Part shown: positions 49,919 to 60,616 of the stretch, in pieces | How positions within the stretch are numbered: the first letter of the stretch is position 1 | How the letters are laid out: the number at the start of each line of letters is the position of its first letter | From: Guillardia theta CCMP2712 | Taxonomy: Eukaryota > Protista > Cryptophyta | Direction of reading: 5' to 3' | Assembly: GCF_000315625.1 (NCBI RefSeq) | Contig: NW_005434631.1 | Location: 310,001-374,000, forward strand | DNA length: 64,000 bases | Notes under the pieces: model-generated | Told to the model about the DNA's origin: nothing | Seen by the model: only the letters and a program-made list of their open reading frames with translations | Database searches by the model: none | Position numbers and translations under genes: made by a program

Positions 49919-52885
49919 ATGCCTTCGCGTGGAGCTCTGGCGCTGCGGACAGCTGCTGTGTTGCTCTTGGCTCTGCAGACCGCGCACTCCAGACCTCTGG
50001 TGAGGAACGTGAAGGACCACAACGAGTACAAGAAGCTCTTGAAACATCACGCGGAGGTCACTGGCCTCCCTGTGATTGTCGACTTCTACAGTGATGGTTG
50101 TGGACCCTGCCGGATGGTAGCGCCGGTCTTCAAGCAGATGGCGGAGCAGTACAAGGACAAGGCGGTGTTCGCTAAGGTCGACATCAACAGGAACTACCAG
50201 ACGGCCTCTGCAGAGCAGATCCGGAGCATGCCGACCTTCAAGCTCTTCCTCTTCGGGAAGAAGCGCGACGAGTTTTCCGGAGCGGACACGCAGAGGTTGA
50301 ACACCATGACGCAGCAGCTGATCCGTGAGTCCGAAGCTAAGAACATCGAGGTCACGTTCGAGGCGCTCAAGTCCTTCTACCAGGAGCATGCGCCCGAGAA
50401 GATGATGGAGATGGACGACAAGAAGCTCCAGGACATCCTGGACAAGGCCGGCAAGGGAGGAGGGCCAGGGCATTACGGTCTTGTCAAGGCTCTCAAGCAA
50501 AAGTACAAGGGGAAGGCCCCCAAGACTCGTCCTCGAGCCGTCCCCAAGCAAGAGACGGCCGCGGAGAAGCCTGCGAGCCCTCCGTCTCCCCGAGGAGGAG
50601 CGAGCAAGCAAGAGGCCAACAAGCCCAATCTTCACCTAGCCACGGTGGAGCAGCTTGAGAAGGAGTTGTCTAAGAGGAGAGAGGAGGAGGCAGCGAAGAA
50701 AGCTGAGGCAGAGGAGGACGATGACGACACTCCTTCCTTCCCTATCTACGACCGCAAGAACAGAAGCGACGTTGAGAACGTCGTCATCATCGGCTCAGGA
50801 CCAGCGGGTCTGTCTGCTGCCATCTACGCGTCACGAGCAGGCCTAAAGGTGCTCCCGCCCTCCTCTGCTGCTCTTGTTCAGCACTCCTTCCCTCCCCTTC
50901 TCCCTCCCTCCCCTTCTCCCATCTCCCCTCCCTCCCTTTCGTCGTCATACTCCACCTCCCCTTCCCTCTCCTTCCCATCCCCCTTCCAATCTAAAACCTC
51001 ATCTTTACCCCCTCCCCCTCCTTCCCTCCTTCTCTGCTGTGTTGACAGCTGACCAAGAGTGGCAGCCTGTGCTCGTGGCTCCTCCGATGGGCGGGCAGCT
51101 GCAAGGGAAGGGAGTCGGAGTTGAGAACTACCCCGGAGTCAACGACACGACTGGACCGAACCTAGTGCACGGCATGCAGGAGCAGGCAGCTCACTTCGGG
51201 ACGGTCTTCCTGCAGGAGCTGGTGGTATCCGTCGACCTCTCCTCCCGTCCATTCCGCGTGCGGACCAACGAGACTGAAGTGAAGGCAAACGCGATGATCA
51301 TGGCGACTGGCGCCGACTCGAGGTGGCTTGGGGTGCCAGGGGAGTACGAGCACAGGGGAGGAGGAGTGTCTTCATGCGCCACGTGCGATGGCTTCTTGTT
51401 CGCAGATCAGGATGTAGTGGTAATCGGTGGAGGCGATACCGCCATGGAGGACGCGCTGGTGCTCGCAAGGACCTCGAAGACTGTCACTGTCATCCATCGC
51501 CGAGACAAGTTCCGAGCATCCAAGGTCAAGATGTCTTCCCTTTCCCCCTCCCTCCCTCCCCTCCCTCCCCTCCCTTCCCTCTCCCTCTCCCTCGTTTCCT
51601 CCCCTTCTCACCGTAGTTGTTGCGTCCTGACGTCACCGGCTAGGTGCTTGCCGAGCGGGTGTTGTCGCATGAAAAGATCAAGGTAATGAGGATTGAGAGG
51701 TGAAAGAGGAGAAGGATGACAAGTGTTTCAGGTTGTGTGGGACACCGAAGTCATCGAATTCATCGGCAAGAGAGTTCGCGTGATGCCCAACGGCCTGACA
51801 GTGAGGAATTTCGAGGGCTGCGATCGTGATTGACCTGCAAATTCAGGTCGAGATCGGCGAAGACGGAAACCCAGTGTTGGAGGTAACGAACATCTTACTC
51901 TCCTCTCCTCTCCTCCCCTCGCATGTCATGCTCTACTCTACTCTACTCTACTCTACTCTACTCTACTCTGCTCTACTCTGCTCTACTCGCTTCTTCAGTC
52001 CCTCTTCTCCCCTGCTATCGTTTCCTCTCTTTCTGTTCAGGAATGTTGAACTCAATGTGGCTATCTAACGCTTGTCAACTAAGGACTTCTCGAAGCTCCG
52101 GGTGAAAGAAGTTCAGAAGCGACTGGACGCTGCAGGTTTCGAGTGCTGAGCGTGAGGAGGAGGAGGGTGAGGCTTATGCAGGGATCAGCTACGCGGGCGT
52201 CAAGGACAAGGAGGCGCTCGTGAAGATTCTCACTGATGCCTACAAGGATGCAGCCAAAGGTGAGGGGGAGGAGGGAGGTGACAATGGGAGGAAATGACGG
52301 ACCTTCAGCGGGCAACGGGGAGGACGATGCAGTTGTGACGGTAGAGGAGAAGTCGATCTTGTCCAAGGTGAAGAAATGGGAAGTGGAAGCTTCGCGATTG
52401 ACAAGCGAGCAGATCAAGATGAAGAACAAGAAGACTGGAGAAGAGTCCCTGTTCCCTTGCACTGCTGCCTTTGTGGCCATTGGACACGATCCAAACACCA
52501 AGTTTGTTCAAGGGCAGGTGAGGAGGAGGAGGAGGAGGAGGAGGAGGAGGAGTGTTTGGGCATCTAAGGCTGCTATCAGGTTGACATGGACTCCAACGGT
52601 TACATCAAAGTGGTTGCGGGCAGCACGCGGACGAGCGTGGAGGGCTTGTTTGCAGCTGGGGATGTAGCTGACCACGTCTATCGTCAGGTACCTCGAGCAG
52701 ACTCTCTACTTGTCCCGCTGACTTGAGATGCAGGCTGTGACGTCAGCAGGAACAGGAGCCATGGCCGGTAAGACTCCTGCCCCCCCCCCCCCCCCCGTGC
52801 TTGTCTTACCCTCCATGCAGCGCTGGACGCCGAGCGGTGGCTGAGCGAGCAAGGATTCTGCAGTGCAGCAGCAGCAGCAGCATGA
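49919..52885 (+). CDS. Signal-peptide thioredoxin + low-MW NADPH thioredoxin reductase (NTR/TrxB) fusion
   Basis: Signal [24 protein letters not shown]. Trx [11 protein letters not shown]...MPTF. NTR motifs [98 protein letters not shown]. Confidence 0.92.
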
Positions 52886-52984
52886 TGGAAGCGAGGGAGG
52901 GATGGGGAGAAGAAGGACTGGATGTTGTAAAGGCGATCATTAACAACGTAACCCCCAGCCCCCTTCCCTCTCGCCCCTACACCT

Positions 52985-55900
52985 TCACGTCCCCCACGCT
53001 GACATGCCAACCTTGCGACGAGGTCCTGCCGTCTCCCACTGCTCCTCCGGGTTTGACGACCAGCTTGACGTTGTCGCGTGCGGGTCTCCCCAGCCACTCA
53101 CGTCGCCCCCCCACGCCCCCCCGACCCCCAGCTGCTCCCCACTTGCCATGCCCTCGCGACTACTCGCGCTGATCGCAGGCTTCCTCGCCCCCCACGCGTT
53201 GCGCACATGCGGCTCGGGCTTCGGGTCAGCGGATCCTCGGAGGTGCGAGGGCAGGTGATCCATCAGGGTCGTCTTGGGGGCCAAGCGCTGATCCTCAGAC
53301 GCGCTCAAGCCGGGGGGCTGCGAGGAGAGAGGCTGCTCTCCTCTCCTCTCGACCTCCCCAGCGCTTCCTGCCGCCTGCATTCTCTTTCTCTGAGCCTCTC
53401 GGATGTAGAAGGCGTGAGAAGCCTCATACTGCTCCTGGCGGAAGAGCTGCCGAGCCAGCTCCTCGTCCTTTCTCTCCTGCTCGAGACGCGCTAGCCTCTC
53501 TCGCTCCTCCTGGCTCATACCAGACAAGGCAGCAGCCGGGGGGTATGCCTCACGTGACAGCTCCGGGTCACGAGAATCGCTCGCCCAGTAGTTGTTTGCT
53601 GTCACTCTCGCCATGTTCCATGGGTTGGTGGGAGGAGGAGGCGGCGGGGGGGTCGCACGAGCCTCTTGAGTGGGCCAACTGCTCCGTCCAGGTTCGGCCC
53701 CTTGTTGCTTCATCTGATCTTCATACTGCTGCATCAGATCCGACGCGTTGATCCTCAAGGGGCCTGTGGACGCGACAGTGTTTCCTTGCAGAGCCGTTCG
53801 CGCGGCGTCGGCATCCTCGTAGCGAACAAAGTTGACGAAGGCGCTTGAAGAGTCAGGCAGGATGTTGATCGGGGGCACACCATGAGTCCTGTTGTTACAC
53901 AGCTCCCCGAAGCGTTCGAAAGCAGCTTTGAATTCAACCTGATCCACAACTTCAATGTGAACATTCCCAACCCACAGGCCGAAGAAGTGGAATCGACTCT
54001 TGTTCCAGGGAAGCTTGCTGGGCGGCAGCTCGCTGCGTAGAGGAATGGGGACGGGAGGGAAGGCATTTTTTTGAGCGTCCCCTTTCGACCTGCCTTTCTT
54101 CTTCTTGGTACCCACTGCCTCCCAGTCATCGTCATCTTGAGAAAGGCCTTTGATCGAACCTCCCCTCGAGCTCGTTTGCGAGTCATCTTCACTCTGCTTG
54201 TCATCCTCGTAACTCCTGGAGGATTGAGCTCCAATGTTTGTTTCCATCGGCGGCGCGTACTGCGGAACATGTTGCGGAGCCGCTTGAGACAGCAACGATT
54301 CTTCATCACCATCCTGCACCTCCCTGAGGAAACAGTTCACAACGACACCGTTCTTGATTTTCTTTCTGTCGAGAGTGTCATTCAGCTCTATCATCTGGCC
54401 CTGGAACACCAGCCTCTGTGCAGCAACTGGGATCCCTGTCAACTCTTTGATCTTCATTCGAAATTGCTTCCCCGTGTCTTGCGGGCTCAGTCCCACAACC
54501 ACCTCCCGGTCATCTGTGAATTTCACTTTCACCTGCACCACACTCGGCTTCTCCGCCTTTGGAGGGGAGGTCGAATTCGGATCTCCTTGCTGTGCCTGCC
54601 CAGGGACCTTCGCGGCGGAGGTGATCGGGAAGTCAGAAGAGTTGGCGGCATACGGGGGGTTCATCGATGAAGCCGTCGGGACCTTGAAGGCGGAATTCCA
54701 AGAAGACCCTTGCCCTTCGCTTTGGGCCTGCATGTTCCAACTGTCTGCGCCAATGTTTCCCCACACCGAGTTGTTGCCCTGTCTGCTGAACACCTGGTCA
54801 CTGCTGATGCCTCCCAGCCCGCCTCCCCACAGTGCGCCAGGGTCACCACTCGCGAAGCCTCCCTGAAACCCTGAGTTTGAGCCCCAGATGTCTTGAGGTT
54901 GCCCGTTGCCCCACATGTTGCCTTGGGCCGCTCCAACATTTCCGCCCTGATTGGGTTGAGGGTAATTGTTGACTGGCTGAGCTGACGCTTGGACCGAATT
55001 GGAGTTGCTGCCCCATGCTGACTTCGTCTGGCTGATGGATGGAAGTGACGCCCCGGTCGCTGGCAGAACGAATTCCTTGACCGGTGCTCGACAATGAGGA
55101 CAGAGGACGCCTTCTGTTGCCTGGAAAACTGCCCGTTTCTTCAAGTTGGTAATGCATTCTGTGCAGAACTGATGGCCACATGGTTTTAAACAGGCATTGG
55201 CAAGGTCCTCGTAACAGATTGTACACACGTTATCCTCATCACCTTCGAAATCAAGGTTGAGCATGGATTCAAGGTCTCTCGAGACTATAGTATCCATCGT
55301 GGTCGCTCCTGTATCCCAATTTGAAGGCACGGTTGCCGTATCCATGGCACTTGCTTCAGCAGTACTAGCCTGGCTTGCTCCCATTGGATCAAACATGTCA
55401 CCCAAATTGCTGATCGCGTTCCAAGAATTATCAGCATCTGCCTGTTTCCATTGATCCACAAGGTCTGAATCCTCTCTTCTCATTCCTTCACGCCCAGGAA
55501 CGCTAGCAAATGCTGGCTTAATGTTGTTTGGTGGACCGCTTCCCCAAGCAGATACCGCTGGAGCAGGCGGCTCCATATTCCTGGAGTAGCTCTGACCAGC
55601 TGAAGTTCCCAGAGTAGCAGCGATCCTCTTGTCCAGTTCAAGCTCTCCACGAGGCTGCATACAAGGCTTTGCTTCCATCCGAACGTTTCCAATGTATGTA
55701 TGGTGCTGACTCAGCAGAGTGTCTGCAGCCTTCTTCTCATGGAAGGTAACGAACGCAAATCCTCTGTATGAACCGTCACGCTCTTTGAGAACCTCGACGT
55801 CAGCTACAGCTCCAAACTAACGTAAAACATCAGAAAATTGAACAGGGCGTCTTTACATGTACCTGGGAAAAATGTGCTCTAAGCTCGTCATGGTCTTTGT

Positions 55901-58404
55901 CTGCAGTCCCACCAATGAAAACTTTTCTTCCGCCAAATGGGGCCTTGCCATTGTCCACTGGAGCATGCCTCGGCGAATACTGGTTGTCAAAAGCACCAAA
56001 TTCTTCACGATTGGTTGATTTCTTGCTGCCTTTCTTTTTGGTTTTAACTTCCTCAAAACCTTCTAGATCTTGTTTAGAGGGCTGCAAACACACGTCAACA
56101 AACAAAGTAATTAAATCAAGCACAGATTTACAATGTCGAATGAAGGTAATTGCCTCTCATGGATGGCTTTGTTGTTAAATTCGTATTTCAATGGTCCAAA
56201 CGCATTAATCAGACGAAAATCATCCTCTTGAGAATCGTTGTCATCGGAATCATTGTCTGAACCATCCTCGGGTTCGACTTTGCTCGTCACAACACTCGGG
56301 GGTTTCTGACTGACTGATTTTCCTTTCTGATTGTGGATAGCGGTGCCCTTCGTCTGTTCGGGAGCGATCTTCTTCTTTGCTTCAGGCTCTTGTTTCACCT
56401 TGACTTTCTTGACATTTTCATCGATTTCTTTTTCTTTCTTGATGGTCTCTGCCTTTGCCTTCGCTTTCTGTATAGAGTCAACCAACTGTGGCAACAATAA
56501 TCAGTACAGCAAGAATACAACAAACAAATCTGACCTGCAACGCCTTCCGAGGTAGATATCCACATCTGTCCAACGCCTCTGCGGCTTCAAGAAGCCCCAC
56601 ACCACCCCTTTTCATCACCGCATCGACTTCCTCGTCAGTGACTATGGCGACAAGTTCTTCAGTGTCTGCGGACATTCCAAGATCGGAAGGTGTTTGCTCT
56701 GGTTCCACCACCTGATGAACATTATATCAGACTTCACATCAACTATTTGAAAGGGAAGCTGACCTTGATTTTACCATTCTTCTTCTCCATGTACTCGAAT
56801 CTTACTTTTTCTATTCGTAAATGTTGCTTTAAACAATATGAATCCATTAATTTTTGCATCGCTGTGCTTGGTTTGACTTTGAAGCTTACATCACGGCATT
56901 TTTCAAGTTTTACACTGATTGTTATGTTTTCTGTAGCAACTGCGCCTTCTTTCACCTGTAAATTCATCATCAGAGGTCCAGAGACACTTGGCAGCACCAT
57001 TACCTCAACAGTCAAATACACTAAGCCATCGTCGATCGCTGCAGAAGGAACACATTCACGCCAACCCCTGTTATCAGAATCCTTTTTGAAAGTGAACGTG
57101 GCCTCTTTTCTACAAATAGCTGCTGCTTTCTGATCTGGAGTCTTTCTTAGTGTGAAAGTAAATGTGACCTGAGTATAGTCAAACCTCTTATATGTCTGCG
57201 TCAAAATGCTTCTATATACCTGCATTTCAAAGCCAGGATCCGCATGAAGAGCATGTCCAGCATCTAAATACGCTGCCATGAATCCTGCTTCGGAACCTTG
57301 CGTCTTTGCCTTGTAGAATCTAACACTCCAAGGCACACCACCAGCATAAAATGGTGGACTGCGAAGCTGATGTTCGTCTGAGGTGTTCTGTGGGTTGGCA
57401 AGTGCCAGACAGCATACTCCGTCCGCAACATGTTCTTCAATATCGCACCAGGCCCAAACCCTTTCTTGCTGCACCACATCGAGGCCTGCAAGTTGAGCTG
57501 GTAGCGACTTTCGTAAACGCTCTAAATAAAGTGTTGCCGCTTCGCACTTTCTATGCAACATTTCGATTCTATGAACAAGATCATCGTACCTGGAGATATC
57601 CATATGGGTCAAAAGAAATTAAGGAAGTGTGCGAAACTTACAAAGGCTGGCATCTGCCAACGTCTAATGATGCATCCAACTTTTCAAGGACGTCACGTGG
57701 GGTTCCAGTCATAAGCTTGTCCGCAACTTCACAGCGCTTCTTGATAACTTCCTCATTTTCTCCTTCAACATTCATTTGTGACGTAAGCTTCAATAACGAA
57801 GTGGCTTGCATATAGGTAGGATGGGTATGTGCTCTGAGTGCTATAAACTCATCTCTGACTTTTCTTGACGCAAATGGCTTCCAAATATTGAGGACCTGGT
57901 CTTCTTCTGTCTTGAATGCCCTGTGTATTTGTAGGAGCCTCTTGAAGGCATTCTTGACCGATTGGAGAGTGGTAGGATCTGCAGTACAATCCGCAATCAA
58001 AGCATGCAGCAAATCTTGAGTTGACGTGATGGGGGTTTTCACTTGTGACTTTTCAAAAACTTTCACGGGGACACTTCGTTCACTGTTACTTTCAGACTTC
58101 ACGGGTTTGTTTTCCTTTTCCGGTCGCTTCCTTTTATCTCTTTGTCGTATATGCTGAGCTGATACTTTTGCCTTGTTACACCGTGGACAAGGATAACCCT
58201 TGTACTGTCCCTTTGCAATCCCTACAGTAATGTCAATACGCAAGTTGCGATCCACAGCAAACACTGACCTTGTTGCCGACAATACTTCTCTTTGCAATGC
58301 ACATGTAGTGAGACCGGTCCACAAGCACCACAGTCGGCTTCAATGAGATCTTCCTCACAAATATCACACGGATTCTTGCAGATGGGACAAGGTTGTAGAG
58401 CCAT
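52985..58404 (-). CDS. ~1,700-aa multidomain protein: C4HC3 finger, MATH, SUMO-like, UBA-like, RRM, C3HC4 RING, UBL, RRM, WG-rich disordered regions
   Basis: Six ~45-52 nt GT-AG introns (near 58245, 57615, 56740, 56510, 56105, 55840), plus a probable in-frame one near 57195, join the ORF fragments in a consistent frame. Domain motifs are listed under findings. An extra 5' exon is possible. Confidence 0.82.
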
Positions 58405-60616
58405 TAGTGCCAACTGTGTATTGAAATAGAGTCAATGTATGAACAATAAGTAAACACAATCCTGTCATCAGAAAAGATGGAGCAAGTCGAAGATGGAAAA
58501 GAGGGTGCGGTGGCAAATCAAATGGAGCCAAGATGACGTTAGATCGCACGACATTTTTCCTCGCTAGAGAATGCTCACACCGATATCAAGGCTGTTCAAT
58601 CTCAAAACTCAAACAAATACAATGTTGAGTTGTATCAAATGACACGTGGAAACAAAATACAAAATCATTTCTCCAATGAACAAATATCGAGTACCAGTAA
58701 ATCCTCTGATGCCAAATCCACTAATTCGTCTACGCATTCTATCTAGGTCATCCCCTAAGTCAAGACGCCTCCAAAAAACAAGGATGTGCTAATGCCCAAG
58801 GTTTAACCCAAAACAAGATTATACTCCATTTGACACGTCAGCCCCCCATGAGTTTGCATCGTTCAACGATGCGCTTTCCATCATCTTCATTATGCTTGAC
58901 CCATTTCCATTTCCCTGATTCTCGATTTCTAATGGAAAGATTATCCTCCACCTACAGCTCCTTGTTCATCCTCATTTCCAAATAGTTCGCATCCCCCCCT
59001 AGCATCTCAACACGCATGTCGCAAGAGGAACCTTCTCAGCTCGATCTACCAGCCATGGTTATATCTCAGTCCTCCTTCTTCTTCCGACCTAACCTCCTCA
59101 TCCGCCTCCGCCATTCCCGCCCACAGCACGCCCGCTCTCTTGGCGGCTGACCTTCAGCTTCCCGAGGAGGGTGTTTGACCAATACCCTTGGACCCACCCC
59201 CTCCCTCCTCTTAATCCTGTAATGATCTTGTTAATCCATCCAACAACAACCTTGAGGCACTGTGAACACCAAAATCCGGGTAATTAGGGGGTACAGGGGT
59301 GGTATTAATCTATGATTTCTGGCTCTTGTTTTGTGTTTATGATTTGTTTACCCCACCCACCCCTGTATAACAACACTATAGATAACCCCACCGATTATTG
59401 AACTACTTGGACACGCTCTTGCAAACTACCCCTACCATGATGGATCTAATCGTATCAGGGGGTAGACATGGGAGAGACGGTTCGAAGTCTGAACAACTCC
59501 TCCTGGGGGGGTAGGGTACCCATGTGTCAAAAGGCTCTATCAAAGAGGGGTAGGGGTGACAAAGAGGGGGTAGATAGTCCCCTTACAAAGGAGATTTTAA
59601 CGAGGGGTCCAATATGAACTTGAGGGTTACAATAGACTGGGGTCATATGAAAGCAGGGGTACGAAGATAGGTGGGGTGGGGTGAAACAGACTTTGATGGG
59701 GTAGTACCCCTGACCCCGAAACTTTCAAAACAGACATATACTTGAGTAAACATTTGACTAATTCATTCCTACCTGGTTGAAAACTGCCAAAATGACAAAA
59801 AATTCAAATATTTCATTATAGTTTCAAAATATCGAACAATATTACACAGAGGCATCCCAACTCTAATCAAGTTGAGTGACATATTTAGTCTATCAGAAGT
59901 GAGCTCACACGTGCAAAGTCTGACGTTGAGTAAAAACTGTCAGTCTACCTACTAGCCTTATGAGCCTCTGGTTCACTCCGGCGAACCCCCGGGTGGGCCC
60001 GGTGGGCCCGGCACCCGGGGCGCGGGGACGCCGCCAGGGTGTGAGTGGACTCGGATGTACCCACCATAAGAACCTAGAGAGAATAATGGGTCAAAATGGG
60101 GGGTGGGTAAACAGCGGTAAGGTTTGTGGCTGCCGAATGGGCGGGAGCAGAGGAAGACGGGAGTGATCAGGGGAGATGTGCAAATGAGAGAAAATGTCGC
60201 AGAGCCAGAAGAAAAAATGAAGAAAGCAGCATAAAAGTATGCAGATCAGAACATGTGTGAACAGATCAAAATTGAAAATGTCGAGCATGTCCGACAGTGG
60301 AAGTCAAAATGGCACAGGGAATCTTGAAACCGGAATCGTAAGGATTCAGGGTAGACGAAGAAAAAGTGAGATTTGATATGATTTAGTAAGTTAGATGAAG
60401 AAGAGGTATGGTTTAGGAATAGACACAATCAATGAGAGAGAAGCGAAAGGCAATGAAGACCAAGTACATGGCGCGTAGAGTCATTCGGAGATGTTGGATC
60501 AGTGAGCCAAAGAGGAAGGGGGGGGGATTTAGAAAAGGACTGTAGAGGTATTGGAGCTTTGAGTCTCAAAGCTCTTTGGTATTGCTTTGCAGCAGGGGTT
60601 CAGCAAGAATCGTAGA

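What the first reader, a model, noticed from the sequence alone, without database searches (positions are those of the whole stretch)
52985..58404. Single-chain RNA-binding ubiquitin/SUMO hub with WG (Argonaute-hook-like) motifs
Seen: splicing the ORF fragments gives one protein with eight modules. (1) C4HC3 finger CPIC-x15-CGAC-x5-HVHC-x19-CPRC (PHD/RING-CH type, ~58392-58180). (2) MATH/TRAF LRSPPFYAGGVPWSVRFY...FTFKKDSDNRGW...VYLTVEV (~57400-57000). (3) SUMO/Rad60-like ITISVK...VSFKVKPSTAMQKLMDSYC...VRFEY...EPEQTPSDLGM (~56930-56650). (4) UBA-like VTDEEVDAVMKRGGVGLLEAAEALDRC. (5) RRM KVFIGG...RGFAFVTF. (6) C3HC4 RING CTIC..CGHQFCTEC..CPHC (55226-55089). (7) Ubiquitin-like domain IKELTGIPVAAQRLVFQG. 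(8) Second RRM LWVGNV...SAFVNF. There is also a DEELARQL ubiquitin-binding-like helix and about 10 WG dipeptides (AWGS x2, MWGN, IWGS, LWGG, VWGN, AWGA, AWGG, GWGD, terminal AWGT) in G/S/N-rich disorder. Established: WG/GW motifs in such contexts bind Argonaute (GW182/TNRC6, plant NRPE1/SPT5L), and RING + RNA-binding ligases (MEX3, CNOT4, Makorin) act in mRNA and ribosome quality control. Inference: I do not recognise this architecture; it could couple small-RNA silencing or ribosome surveillance to ubiquitin/SUMO transfer in one polypeptide.
Basis: partly seen in the sequence, partly recalled or inferred. Interest (0 to 1): 0.85.

Follow-up and report, generated by a model that had tools for sequence, protein, structure and literature searches.

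The report
Cryptophyte giant RNA-binding RING ligase
One expressed nine-exon gene encodes a 1,674-residue protein, so far seen only in cryptophyte algae, that joins a RING ubiquitin-ligase domain to two RNA-binding domains, a MATH domain, SUMO-like and ubiquitin-like domains and conserved tryptophan motifs whose binding partner is unknown.

Summary
On the minus strand, ATG 58404 to stop 52985, eight short GT-AG introns (46-52 nt) leave one open frame of 1,674 codons. Two independent transcriptome assemblies each carry the locus as one spliced contig, and 3'-biased raw RNA reads pile up at only one place on this strand.

Pfam, PDB and fold searches confirm MATH, a SUMO-like domain without a GG end, RRM1, a C3HC4 RING, an internal ubiquitin-like domain and RRM2. 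The N-terminal C4HC3 finger has PHD spacing but no significant family hit. The "UBA-like" segment is only a predicted three-helix unit.

The same architecture occurs in Geminigera, Rhodomonas, Baffinella and marine metagenome relatives, all annotated as hypothetical. I found no characterised family.

WG is enriched (10 seen, 2-3 expected). In the disordered linkers W is retained in 75% of aligned positions, against 31% for other residues.

The Argonaute-hook reading remains a hypothesis. No tool or paper showed Argonaute in cryptophytes. CCR4-NOT docking, FG-like cohesion or a chromatin role fit equally well.

Best reading: a lineage-specific RNA-binding RING E3 scaffold with functional W motifs. 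It is a new combination of known domains.

The parts
52985..58404 (-). Whole coding region: 9 exons, 1,674 codons plus stop. Exons: 58404-58269, 58221-57642, 57589-57220, 57168-57004, 56955-56764, 56711-56535, 56485-56132, 56081-55863, 55816-52985.
   Evidence: Spliced ORF with a single terminal stop. All 8 joints are seen in the transcript contigs of runs X1 and X2.
58181..58389 (-). N-terminal C4HC3 cross-brace zinc finger (aa 6-59), split by intron 1 (58268-58222). Spacing is C-x2-C-x15-C-x2-C-x5-H-x2-C-x18-C-x2-C.
   Evidence: Read directly from the sequence. In the relatives that cover it, the CPIC and CGAC pairs, the H-x-x-C and the final C-P-x-C are kept. Only a weak zf-RING_2 hit, E=0.065.
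57451..58060 (-). Conserved helical region of unknown fold (aa 100-285), ending in a long helix just before the MATH domain.
   Evidence: 53-57% identity to orthologs. AF2 predicts helices but mean pLDDT is 50. No Pfam or PDB hit.
57004..57408 (-). MATH domain (aa 300-417), interrupted by the 51-nt intron 57219-57169.
   Evidence: Pfam MATH_2 39.1 bits (cut-off 32) and MATH 29.4 bits (cut-off 21.2) in the ortholog. 6 of 7 family rows hit MATH_2.
56646..56934 (-). Internal SUMO-like domain (aa 425-503) with no C-terminal GG, split by intron 56763-56712.
   Evidence: Rad60-SLD 26.6 bits, above the 23.8 cut-off. SUMO2 at E=4.8e-9. Ortholog AF2 model pLDDT 81.7. Foldseek SUMO1/2/Smt3 TMt 0.85-0.90, rmsd about 1.9 A.
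56471..56642 (-). Conserved three-helix segment (aa 505-545), 'UBA-like' by shape only.
   Evidence: Helices H97-106, H110-119 and H124-150 in the ortholog model. 51-68% identity. No Pfam or PDB sequence match.
55655..55934 (-). RRM1 (aa 708-785) with RNP2 KVFIGG and RNP1 RGFAFVTF. It spans the last intron (55862-55817).
   Evidence: RRM_1 33.8 bits in the ortholog. hnRNP A1 / hnRNP D-like hits at E 1e-11 to 4e-13.
55235..55642 (-). Disordered linker with conserved W islands (W822 SAWGS, W854, W898).
   Evidence: Family alignment. Composition.
55082..55225 (-). C3HC4 RING finger (aa 929-976). It has Ile after the first Cys, CPHC, and Arg directly after the last Cys.
   Evidence: zf-C3HC4_3 34.6 bits and zf-C3HC4 28.6 bits, both above cut-off. 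CBL, LNX and TRIM5 RINGs in the PDB. Ortholog alignment.
54536..55057 (-). G/S/N/Q-rich WG region (aa 985-1158) with W999, 1033, 1042, 1061, 1083, 1091 and 1104.
   Evidence: 76% small or polar residues. WG enrichment. W conservation. No DNA tandem repeat.
54314..54532 (-). Internal ubiquitin-like domain (aa 1160-1232) with no GG end.
   Evidence: Pfam ubiquitin 45.2 bits. Ubiquitin and NEDD8 hits in the PDB.
54092..54139 (-). Conserved DDDDWEAVG(T/K)KKKK motif (aa 1291-1306). It carries an Atg8-interaction-like W-x-x-V core after an acidic run, followed by a basic cluster.
   Evidence: The WEAVG core and a following basic run are kept in all six relatives that cover it. Reading it as a LIR/AIM is inference from pattern only.
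53714..53998 (-). RRM2 (aa 1338-1432) with LWVGNV and SAFVNF. This is the best conserved part of the protein.
   Evidence: RRM_1 28.3 bits in the ortholog and 16.7 bits in the window ORF. 74-82% identity. Pub1 and TIA-1 RRMs in the PDB.
53366..53518 (-). Conserved long helix ERERLARLEQERKDEELARQL...YEAS (aa 1498-1548), a candidate MIU-type ubiquitin-binding helix.
   Evidence: 20 invariant columns in 5 sequences. The best PDB hit is 2n11_A, unconventional myosin VI residues 3-23 (LEQERRDRELALRIAQSE), at a non-significant E=0.13. That this stretch is myosin VI's MIU is my recollection.
52988..53212 (-). C-terminal W-rich tail (aa 1600-1674): NAWGA, GAWGG, SGWGD, SSWSS, EQWETAGPRR and terminal AWGT.
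   Evidence: Five of the six W are matched by W in P0003.

Best explanation
The locus is one expressed gene for a 1,674-aa multidomain RNA-binding RING-type E3 ubiquitin ligase and scaffold, found so far only in cryptophytes.

Shown:
- It is one spliced mRNA with one open reading frame.
- The domain order is: C4HC3 finger, helical region, MATH, SUMO-like domain, three-helix unit, K/E-rich linker, RRM1, W-linker, RING, WG-rich linker, ubiquitin-like domain, acidic-W motif, RRM2, W-linker, long conserved helix, W-rich tail.
- This order is conserved across cryptophyte genera.
- The tryptophans in the disordered linkers are kept while the spacers diverge.

Inferred mechanism:
- The RING recruits a charged E2. 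It has all eight zinc ligands, the usual hydrophobic E2-contact positions and an Arg right after the last Cys.
- The two RRMs, both with canonical RNP1 and RNP2, hold the ligase on RNA or RNPs.
- MATH and the W islands act as peptide-docking sites that bring in substrates or partner complexes.
- The SUMO-like and ubiquitin-like domains cannot be conjugated. Together with the MIU-like helix, they would read or mimic Ub/SUMO signals, either to recruit SIM/UIM proteins or to regulate the RING within the same molecule.

The partner of the W motifs is not known. Candidates are Argonaute, CCR4-NOT/CAF40-type W pockets, or self-association.
For: Single gene: (8 joints in two independent assemblies; open frame; only one sizeable minus-strand read pile).

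Collinear orthologs:
- L001: a 781-aa uninterrupted N-half, followed by RING and UBL-RRM2 ORFs on the same strand.
- Geminigera P0197, 1,133 aa: MATH+SLD+RRM+RING in one ORF.
- P0002 and P0204: RING+UBL+RRM in one ORF.

Domains.

RING features.

W motifs: enrichment p<=1e-4. W identity 52/69 against 621/1992 for other residues in the linkers. The two WG flanking the RING survive even in the 40%-identical Baffinella protein.

Folded domains are 60-82% identical and linkers 18-44%.
Against: - No activity, RNA binding or partner has been tested.
- MATH is divergent: a family-profile search of the PDB finds no MATH structure.
- The N-terminal 300 residues could not be modelled (pLDDT 50).
- The Baffinella ortholog lacks RRM1, so not every module is essential.
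- MAFFT rewards W-W matches, and the compared sequences are related, so the W-conservation statistic overstates independence.
- Transcript contigs can merge overlapping genes. X1 also runs into the convergent neighbour.
Confidence: 0.8

Rival explanations
1. One reading: the WG/W islands are Argonaute hooks. The protein would then be a GW182-like Argonaute-docking scaffold carrying its own E3 ligase, ubiquitylating Argonaute, its targets or nearby RNP or chromatin proteins.
For: - The W contexts (SAWGS, NMWGN, DIWGS, ALWGG, SVWGN, DSWN, SSWN) sit in G/S/N/Q-rich disorder. Successive W in the WG region are 8-34 residues apart (positions).
- W is conserved while the spacers drift.
- GW182 proteins also embed a UBA and an RRM in unstructured W-rich regions (abstract of PMC2685099).
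Against: - No homology to any known Argonaute-binding protein.
- Argonaute was not shown to exist in cryptophytes by any search here.
- The same motif type binds other W pockets.
- No Ago-hook predictor could be run.
Confidence: 0.2
2. The W motifs dock mRNA-decay machinery, meaning the W-binding pockets of CCR4-NOT (CAF40/CNOT9, NOT1) or PAN3, as the GW182 silencing domain does. The protein would then be an RRM-guided repressor and E3 that acts without small RNAs.
For: - W islands flank RRM2 and fill the C-terminal tail. In GW182 the silencing domain around the RRM contacts PABP and CCR4-NOT (abstract of PMC5785596).
- From my own knowledge, CCR4-NOT is near-universal in eukaryotes, so no lineage-specific partner is needed.
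- From my own knowledge, RING+RRM also occurs in CNOT4.
Against: - Purely by analogy, with no partner data.
- The WG-rich block between the RING and the UBL looks more like an N-terminal GW182-type platform than like a silencing domain.
Confidence: 0.15
3. It is a chromatin or DNA-damage-type ligase. The PHD-spaced finger would read histone tails, RING plus MIU-like helix would work like RNF168, and the SUMO-like domain like Rad60/NIP45. The RRMs would bind nascent RNA, and the W/G-rich linkers would mainly provide cohesive, FG-like low-complexity contacts for condensates or nuclear transport receptors.
For: - C4HC3 spacing fits PHD.
- Basic NLS-like clusters: RQRDKRKRPEK, TKKKKGRSK.
- Best PDB hit of the conserved helix is myosin VI residues 3-23 (2n11_A), which I recall as its MIU.
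- RING+MIU is the RNF168 layout (PMC2699339).
- ALWGG, SAWGS and GLWGG resemble GLFG/SAFG repeats with W in place of F (sequence).
Against: - No PHD profile hit.
- The MIU match is not significant (E=0.13).
- No localisation data.
- FG-like cohesion would not by itself predict retention of W at fixed aligned positions.
Confidence: 0.2
4. It is an artefact: two or more adjacent same-strand genes (a finger-MATH-SLD gene and a RING-UBL-RRM gene) merged by assembly or read-through.
For: - The X1 contig also merges the convergent neighbour.
- GC content and intron density change sharply between the 5' 2.6 kb and the 3' 2.8 kb.
- A public record carries only a 238-aa piece of this gene (P0001).
Against: - No in-frame stop over 1,674 codons.
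- RRM1 is split by the last intron, so the two halves share a domain.
- Two assemblies from different studies agree.
- There is only one sizeable read pile near the 3' end.
- Geminigera and L001 show the same continuity.
Confidence: 0.03

Closest known systems
GW182/TNRC6 family (Argonaute- and CCR4-NOT-binding scaffolds)
   Same: Multiple W motifs in G/S/N/Q-rich disordered regions surround a small helical (UBA-type) unit and an RRM. W residues are conserved and spacers are not.
   Different: No sequence homology was detected. This protein adds a RING, MATH, a SUMO-like domain, a UBL and a zinc finger. Its RRMs keep canonical RNP motifs. Argonaute binding is untested.
RNA-binding RING E3 ligases (CNOT4, MEX3, Makorin, RBBP6/Mpe1), named from my own knowledge
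   Same: A RING E3 module and RNA-binding domain(s) sit in one chain. RBBP6 also has a ubiquitin-like domain.
   Different: None combines MATH, SLD, UBL, two RRMs and W platforms. There is no detectable orthology. The RING is closest by profile to the zf-C3HC4_3 and XB3/XBAT31 types.
TRAF / TRIM37-type proteins (cross-brace finger, coiled coil, MATH)
   Same: The N-terminal half follows the order cross-brace zinc finger, long helices, MATH.
   Different: No TRAF-type zinc fingers or B-box were detected. The finger has C4HC3 (PHD) spacing. MATH is followed by an SLD and much more.
Rad60/Esc2/NIP45 SUMO-like-domain proteins
   Same: An internal SUMO-derived beta-grasp without a GG end. It keeps FKVK, SYC and TPxDLGM, which resemble SUMO as I recall its sequence.
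   Different: There is one SLD, not a tandem pair, embedded in a RING/RRM protein. No other similarity.
RNF168 (RING plus MIU ubiquitin-binding helices)
   Same: A RING plus a conserved ELARxL-type helix whose best PDB match is a myosin VI stretch that I recall as its MIU.
   Different: The match is not significant. The helix lies far C-terminal to the RING. No homology.

Membership tests
RING-type E3 (C3HC4) | Eight zinc ligands with cross-brace spacing, recognised by RING profiles | tested here: met
   zf-C3HC4_3 34.6 bits (cut-off 27) and zf-C3HC4 28.6 bits (cut-off 21) in the window ORF. Also met in all orthologs tested.
RING-type E3 (C3HC4) | E2-contact residues and a linchpin basic residue after the last Cys | tested here: met
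   CTIC (Ile), CPHC (Pro) and Arg after Cys8 are invariant in 5 sequences. Their roles are taken from established RING mechanism, not assayed here.
RING-type E3 (C3HC4) | E2-dependent ubiquitin transfer | not testable with these tools
   Needs an in vitro ubiquitylation assay.
RRM | Profile match with RNP1 and RNP2 aromatic positions | tested here: met
   RRM1: 33.8 bits, hnRNP A1/D-like E 1e-11 to 4e-13. RRM2: 28.3 bits in the ortholog, Pub1/TIA-1 in the PDB. Motifs KVFIGG/RGFAFVTF and LWVGNV/SAFVNF.
MATH/TRAF-C domain | Pfam MATH or MATH_2 above the gathering score | tested here: met
   Ortholog: 39.1 bits (cut-off 32) and 29.4 bits (cut-off 21.2). 6 of 7 family rows hit. The window ORF piece alone scores 23.5 bits because it reads through an intron. 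No PDB sequence hit.
TRAF family | TRAF-type zinc fingers between the RING and the coiled coil | tested here: not met
   No zf-TRAF hit in the 760-aa N-half.
SUMO-like domain (Rad60-SLD class) | SUMO-type beta-grasp by sequence and fold | tested here: met
   26.6 bits, above the 23.8 cut-off. SUMO2 at E=4.8e-9. Foldseek TMt 0.85-0.90.
Conjugatable SUMO or ubiquitin | C-terminal di-glycine at the end of the beta-grasp | tested here: not met
   The SLD ends ...EELVAIVTDEE and the UBL ends ...VVNCFLREVQDG. Neither has GG, and both are internal.
Ubiquitin-like domain | Pfam ubiquitin above the cut-off | tested here: met
   45.2 bits against a cut-off of 25.4. Ubiquitin and NEDD8 in the PDB.
UBA domain | UBA profile match or UBA fold match | tested here: inconclusive
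   No Pfam or PDB sequence hit. The model shows three helices after the SLD, but the fold search was dominated by SUMO.
PHD finger | C4HC3 spacing plus a PHD profile match | tested here: inconclusive
   The spacing fits. There is no PHD hit, only zf-RING_2 at E=0.065. The AF2 model was unusable.
GW/WG Argonaute-hook platform | Several W flanked by G/S/N/D in disorder, and conserved | tested here: met
GW/WG Argonaute-hook platform | Argonaute present in the organism and bound through the W residues | not tested
Binding needs experiments.
GW182/TNRC6 | Sequence homology to the family | tested here: not met
   I recognised no GW182/TNRC6 among the listed PDB hits (best 60 shown) or Pfam hits.
MIU ubiquitin-binding helix | Helix with a central LA...L core and flanking acidic residues, similar to proven MIUs | tested here: inconclusive
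   The best PDB hit of the family profile is myosin VI 2n11_A residues 3-23 (recalled as its MIU), but E=0.13.

The most novel reading that the evidence does not exclude
Cryptophytes have evolved their own GW182-like platform. Its conserved W islands would dock Argonaute and/or CCR4-NOT, and the platform is fused to an active RING ligase, SUMO-like and ubiquitin-like modules and two RRMs. Small-RNA or RRM-guided target recognition would then be coupled directly to ubiquitylation within one polypeptide.
Probability: 0.2. Interest if true: 0.8.

Novelty: new variant of a known kind. Interest (0 to 1): 0.55.

Why it matters
RNA-binding RING ligases and W-motif scaffolds are both known, but I found no described protein that unites them with MATH, SUMO-like and ubiquitin-like modules.

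The gene is conserved across cryptophyte genera and abundant in marine metagenomes. Where a public name was found for any family member it was 'hypothetical protein', and one public record carries only a 238-aa piece of this gene.

If the W islands dock Argonaute or CCR4-NOT, this would be an independent invention of a GW182-type adaptor with a built-in E3. That would be useful for understanding how RNA silencing or decay is wired to ubiquitin signalling outside animals and plants.

If not, it is still a clean example of conserved short W motifs in rapidly evolving linkers, with a partner waiting to be found.

Tried and rejected
- My first sequence-only model missed the 51-nt intron in MATH and chose the wrong acceptor for the 56534 intron. 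It was corrected from the transcript joints.
- AF2 of the N-terminal 300 aa gave pLDDT 50 and was not used for fold search.
- Profile and single-sequence PDB searches for the UBA-like unit, the MATH domain and the N-terminal region gave only chance-level hits: Med11, desmoplakin, spectrin PH.
- The HYPK chain hit (E=0.0026) spans the SLD plus linker. I could not separate it from the SUMO-like part, so I did not count it as UBA evidence.
- The Atlas feature search of the N-region scored only 0.76-0.78, which is a lead only.
- Searches for relatives of the N-region and of the RRM2-helix region returned the same five family members each. None of the family members with a named source lies outside cryptophytes.
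- Seven literature searches and several paper look-ups did not establish whether cryptophytes have Argonaute or Dicer. The genome paper is not in the library.
- A tandem-repeat origin of the WG block was rejected.
- Ribosome quality control was considered and dropped, because no module or hit points to it.

Full report
**Gene structure**

The six-frame ORF list and the minus-strand sequence show a chain of ORF pieces between 58404 and 52985 that canonical short introns can join. My first model used seven GT-AG introns and gave an open frame of 1,685 codons.

I laid public runs on 52700-58690. Run X1 (organism label A, 2014) and run X2 (label B, 2018) each hold one contig spanning the locus, with eight joints that read CT..AC on the plus strand. 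These are minus-strand GT-AG introns:
- 58268-58222 (47 nt)
- 57641-57590 (52 nt)
- 57219-57169 (51 nt)
- 57003-56956 (48 nt)
- 56763-56712 (52 nt)
- 56534-56486 (49 nt)
- 56131-56082 (50 nt)
- 55862-55817 (46 nt)

Two of these corrected my model. With them the CDS is 5,025 nt and 1,674 aa, with one stop at its end.

The X1 contig also runs into the convergent plus-strand neighbour (joint 52766/52820, GT..AG), so a contig alone does not prove one transcript. Four further points argue for one gene:
- The frame stays open over every joint.
- RRM1 is split by the last intron.
- Raw RNA run X17, whose reads pile near 3' ends, has its only sizeable minus-strand pile at 52900-53099.
- The run shows nothing above 0.5x between 53100 and 58690.

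Run X12 covers the region unspliced at low depth, as DNA would.

**Domains**

Pfam on the ORF pieces and on a contiguous ortholog gives:
- RING (zf-C3HC4_3, zf-C3HC4), ubiquitin, Rad60-SLD, and RRM_1 twice.
- MATH_2 and MATH. Both are above the gathering score in the ortholog, and MATH_2 hits 6 of 7 family rows.

PDB sequence searches add detail:
- RRM1 resembles hnRNP A1 and hnRNP D-like RRMs, E 1e-11 to 4e-13.
- The SLD resembles SUMO2, E=4.8e-9.
- The UBL resembles ubiquitin and NEDD8, and the RING resembles CBL, LNX and TRIM5.
- RRM2 resembles Pub1 and TIA-1 RRMs.

An AF2 model of the ortholog's SLD plus following segment has pLDDT 81.7. It shows a beta-grasp followed by three helices. Foldseek superposes the beta-grasp on SUMO1, SUMO2 and Smt3 at TMt 0.85-0.90 and rmsd about 1.9 A.

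Neither beta-grasp domain ends in GG. Both are therefore built-in interaction modules, not modifiers.

- The N-terminal finger has exact PHD-type C4HC3 spacing, and its zinc-ligand residues are kept in the relatives that cover it. It gives only a weak zf-RING_2 hit (E=0.065) and no PHD hit. The 300-residue N-terminal model was unusable (pLDDT 50).
- The 'UBA-like' segment is conserved and predicted as three helices, but has no Pfam or PDB sequence support.

The DEELARQL helix is strongly conserved, with 20 invariant columns in five sequences. Its best PDB match is 2n11_A, unconventional myosin VI residues 3-23 (LEQERRDRELALRIAQSE), which I recall as that protein's MIU. The match is not significant at E=0.13.

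**Relatives**

HMMER of the last exon against 1.84 billion representatives found 13 hits below 1e-30. The rest were mainly polyubiquitin matches to the UBL.

The real relatives are unnamed fragments and a few long ORFs. Contigs encoding one of them carry three ORFs on the same strand, in the same order. The first is an uninterrupted 781-aa ORF that starts at Met and holds finger, helical region, MATH, SLD, three-helix unit, linker and RRM1. It is collinear with my spliced model, which independently validates the splicing.

Named members are all cryptophytes:
- Rhodomonas lens (P0180).
- Geminigera cryophila (P0197, 1,133 aa), whose single ORF runs from the N-region through RRM1, the W-linker and the RING into the WG block.
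- Baffinella frigidus / CCMP2293 (P0181 cluster, about 40% identity).

Where a source name exists it is 'hypothetical protein'. One public record carries only a 238-aa piece of this very gene (P0001). Searches restricted to the N-region and to the RRM2-helix region returned only family members.

The window organism is therefore very probably a cryptophyte.

**W motifs**

The protein has 28 W, 23 of them in the last exon. Ten of those 23 are followed by G, where shuffles give 2.0 (global) or 2.9 (within 40-residue blocks), p<=1e-4. No DNA tandem repeat underlies the block.

In a family alignment the W stand as conserved islands:
- W822 (SAWGS/T) and W999 (KSAWGS/T) flank the RING and are kept even in Baffinella (KLAWGG, PTAWG).
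- W854, 898, 1061, 1083, 1091 and 1104 are kept.
- W1296 (DDDDWEAVGKKKK) is kept in all that cover it.
- W1464 and W1475 are kept.
- Five of the six tail W are matched in P0003.

Across the five linkers W is identical in 52 of 69 aligned cells. All other residues are identical in 621 of 1,992 cells. Folded domains are 60-82% identical and linkers 18-44%.

This statistic is inflated by relatedness and by the aligner's W-W reward, but the pattern is clear to the eye. It is how functional short W motifs behave.

**Interpretation**

What is established is a conserved, expressed, single-chain protein with a probably competent RING. It has all zinc ligands, Ile after Cys1, CPHC, and Arg after Cys8. 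It also has two canonical RRMs and several docking or reader modules.

I therefore read it as a lineage-specific RNA-binding RING E3 scaffold.

GW182 does embed a UBA and an RRM in W-rich disorder (PMC2685099 abstract). Nothing here distinguishes Argonaute from other options:
- Other W-pocket partners such as CCR4-NOT or PAN3 (PMC5785596 abstract).
- FG-like cohesive behaviour.
- A nuclear or chromatin role, suggested by the PHD-spaced finger, the basic clusters and the RING-plus-MIU layout (PMC2699339).

Whether cryptophytes have Argonaute could not be settled. Ribosome surveillance has no support. 'SUMO transfer' is not implied by a non-conjugatable SLD.

**Verdict**

Every module belongs to a known kind. 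The combination and the family are new, so I rate it a new variant of a known kind, of moderate to good interest.

Noticed in passing
window 54092-54139 (-), aa 1291-1306: DDDDWEAVG(T/K)KKKK is kept in all six relatives that cover it. An acidic run followed by W-x-x-V is the pattern of an Atg8/LC3-interacting (LIR/AIM) motif, and a basic NLS-like cluster follows.
   Followed up: partly
window 52700-52950 (+): The convergent thioredoxin-reductase-like gene has a 53-nt GT-AG intron (joint 52766/52820) and a poly(A) site at about 52946. This lies about 40 nt short of the stop codon of the gene studied, so the two 3' UTRs overlap and assemblies merge the two transcripts.
   Followed up: partly
P0057 cluster (13 members, marine samples): A second, smaller protein family of 726 aa shares the same three-helix segment (..AVMERACVGLQEAIEAM..NPRKAVQLLES) and the same RING signature (..GVLCPHCRQ). 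It combines them with a weak UBA hit, a weak RanBP2-type zinc-finger hit (below cut-off) and one RRM.
   Followed up: partly
P0187/P0193/P0194 (Baffinella frigidus cluster): The 40%-identical ortholog goes from the K-rich linker straight to the W-linker and RING without RRM1. RRM1 is therefore dispensable or alternatively spliced there.
   Followed up: no
window 52985-58404 versus L001 4481-10270: Intron positions are not shared. The window gene has all 8 introns in its 5' 2.6 kb (GC about 41-50%) and none in the 2.8-kb last exon (GC 50-66%). The relative has an intronless N-half and two gaps between ORF calls, likely introns, in the C-half.
   Followed up: no
P0001 (238 aa, NCBI source, contig 577,038 nt): The only 100%-identical public protein found is a 238-aa piece (aa 301-538 of the last exon). 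The public record therefore appears to miss the full-length protein.
   Followed up: no
window 53188, 53758, 57462: Low-depth unspliced contigs of run X12 differ from the window by single-base indels inside the coding region. At depth 3-9 these are most likely read or assembly errors.
   Followed up: no
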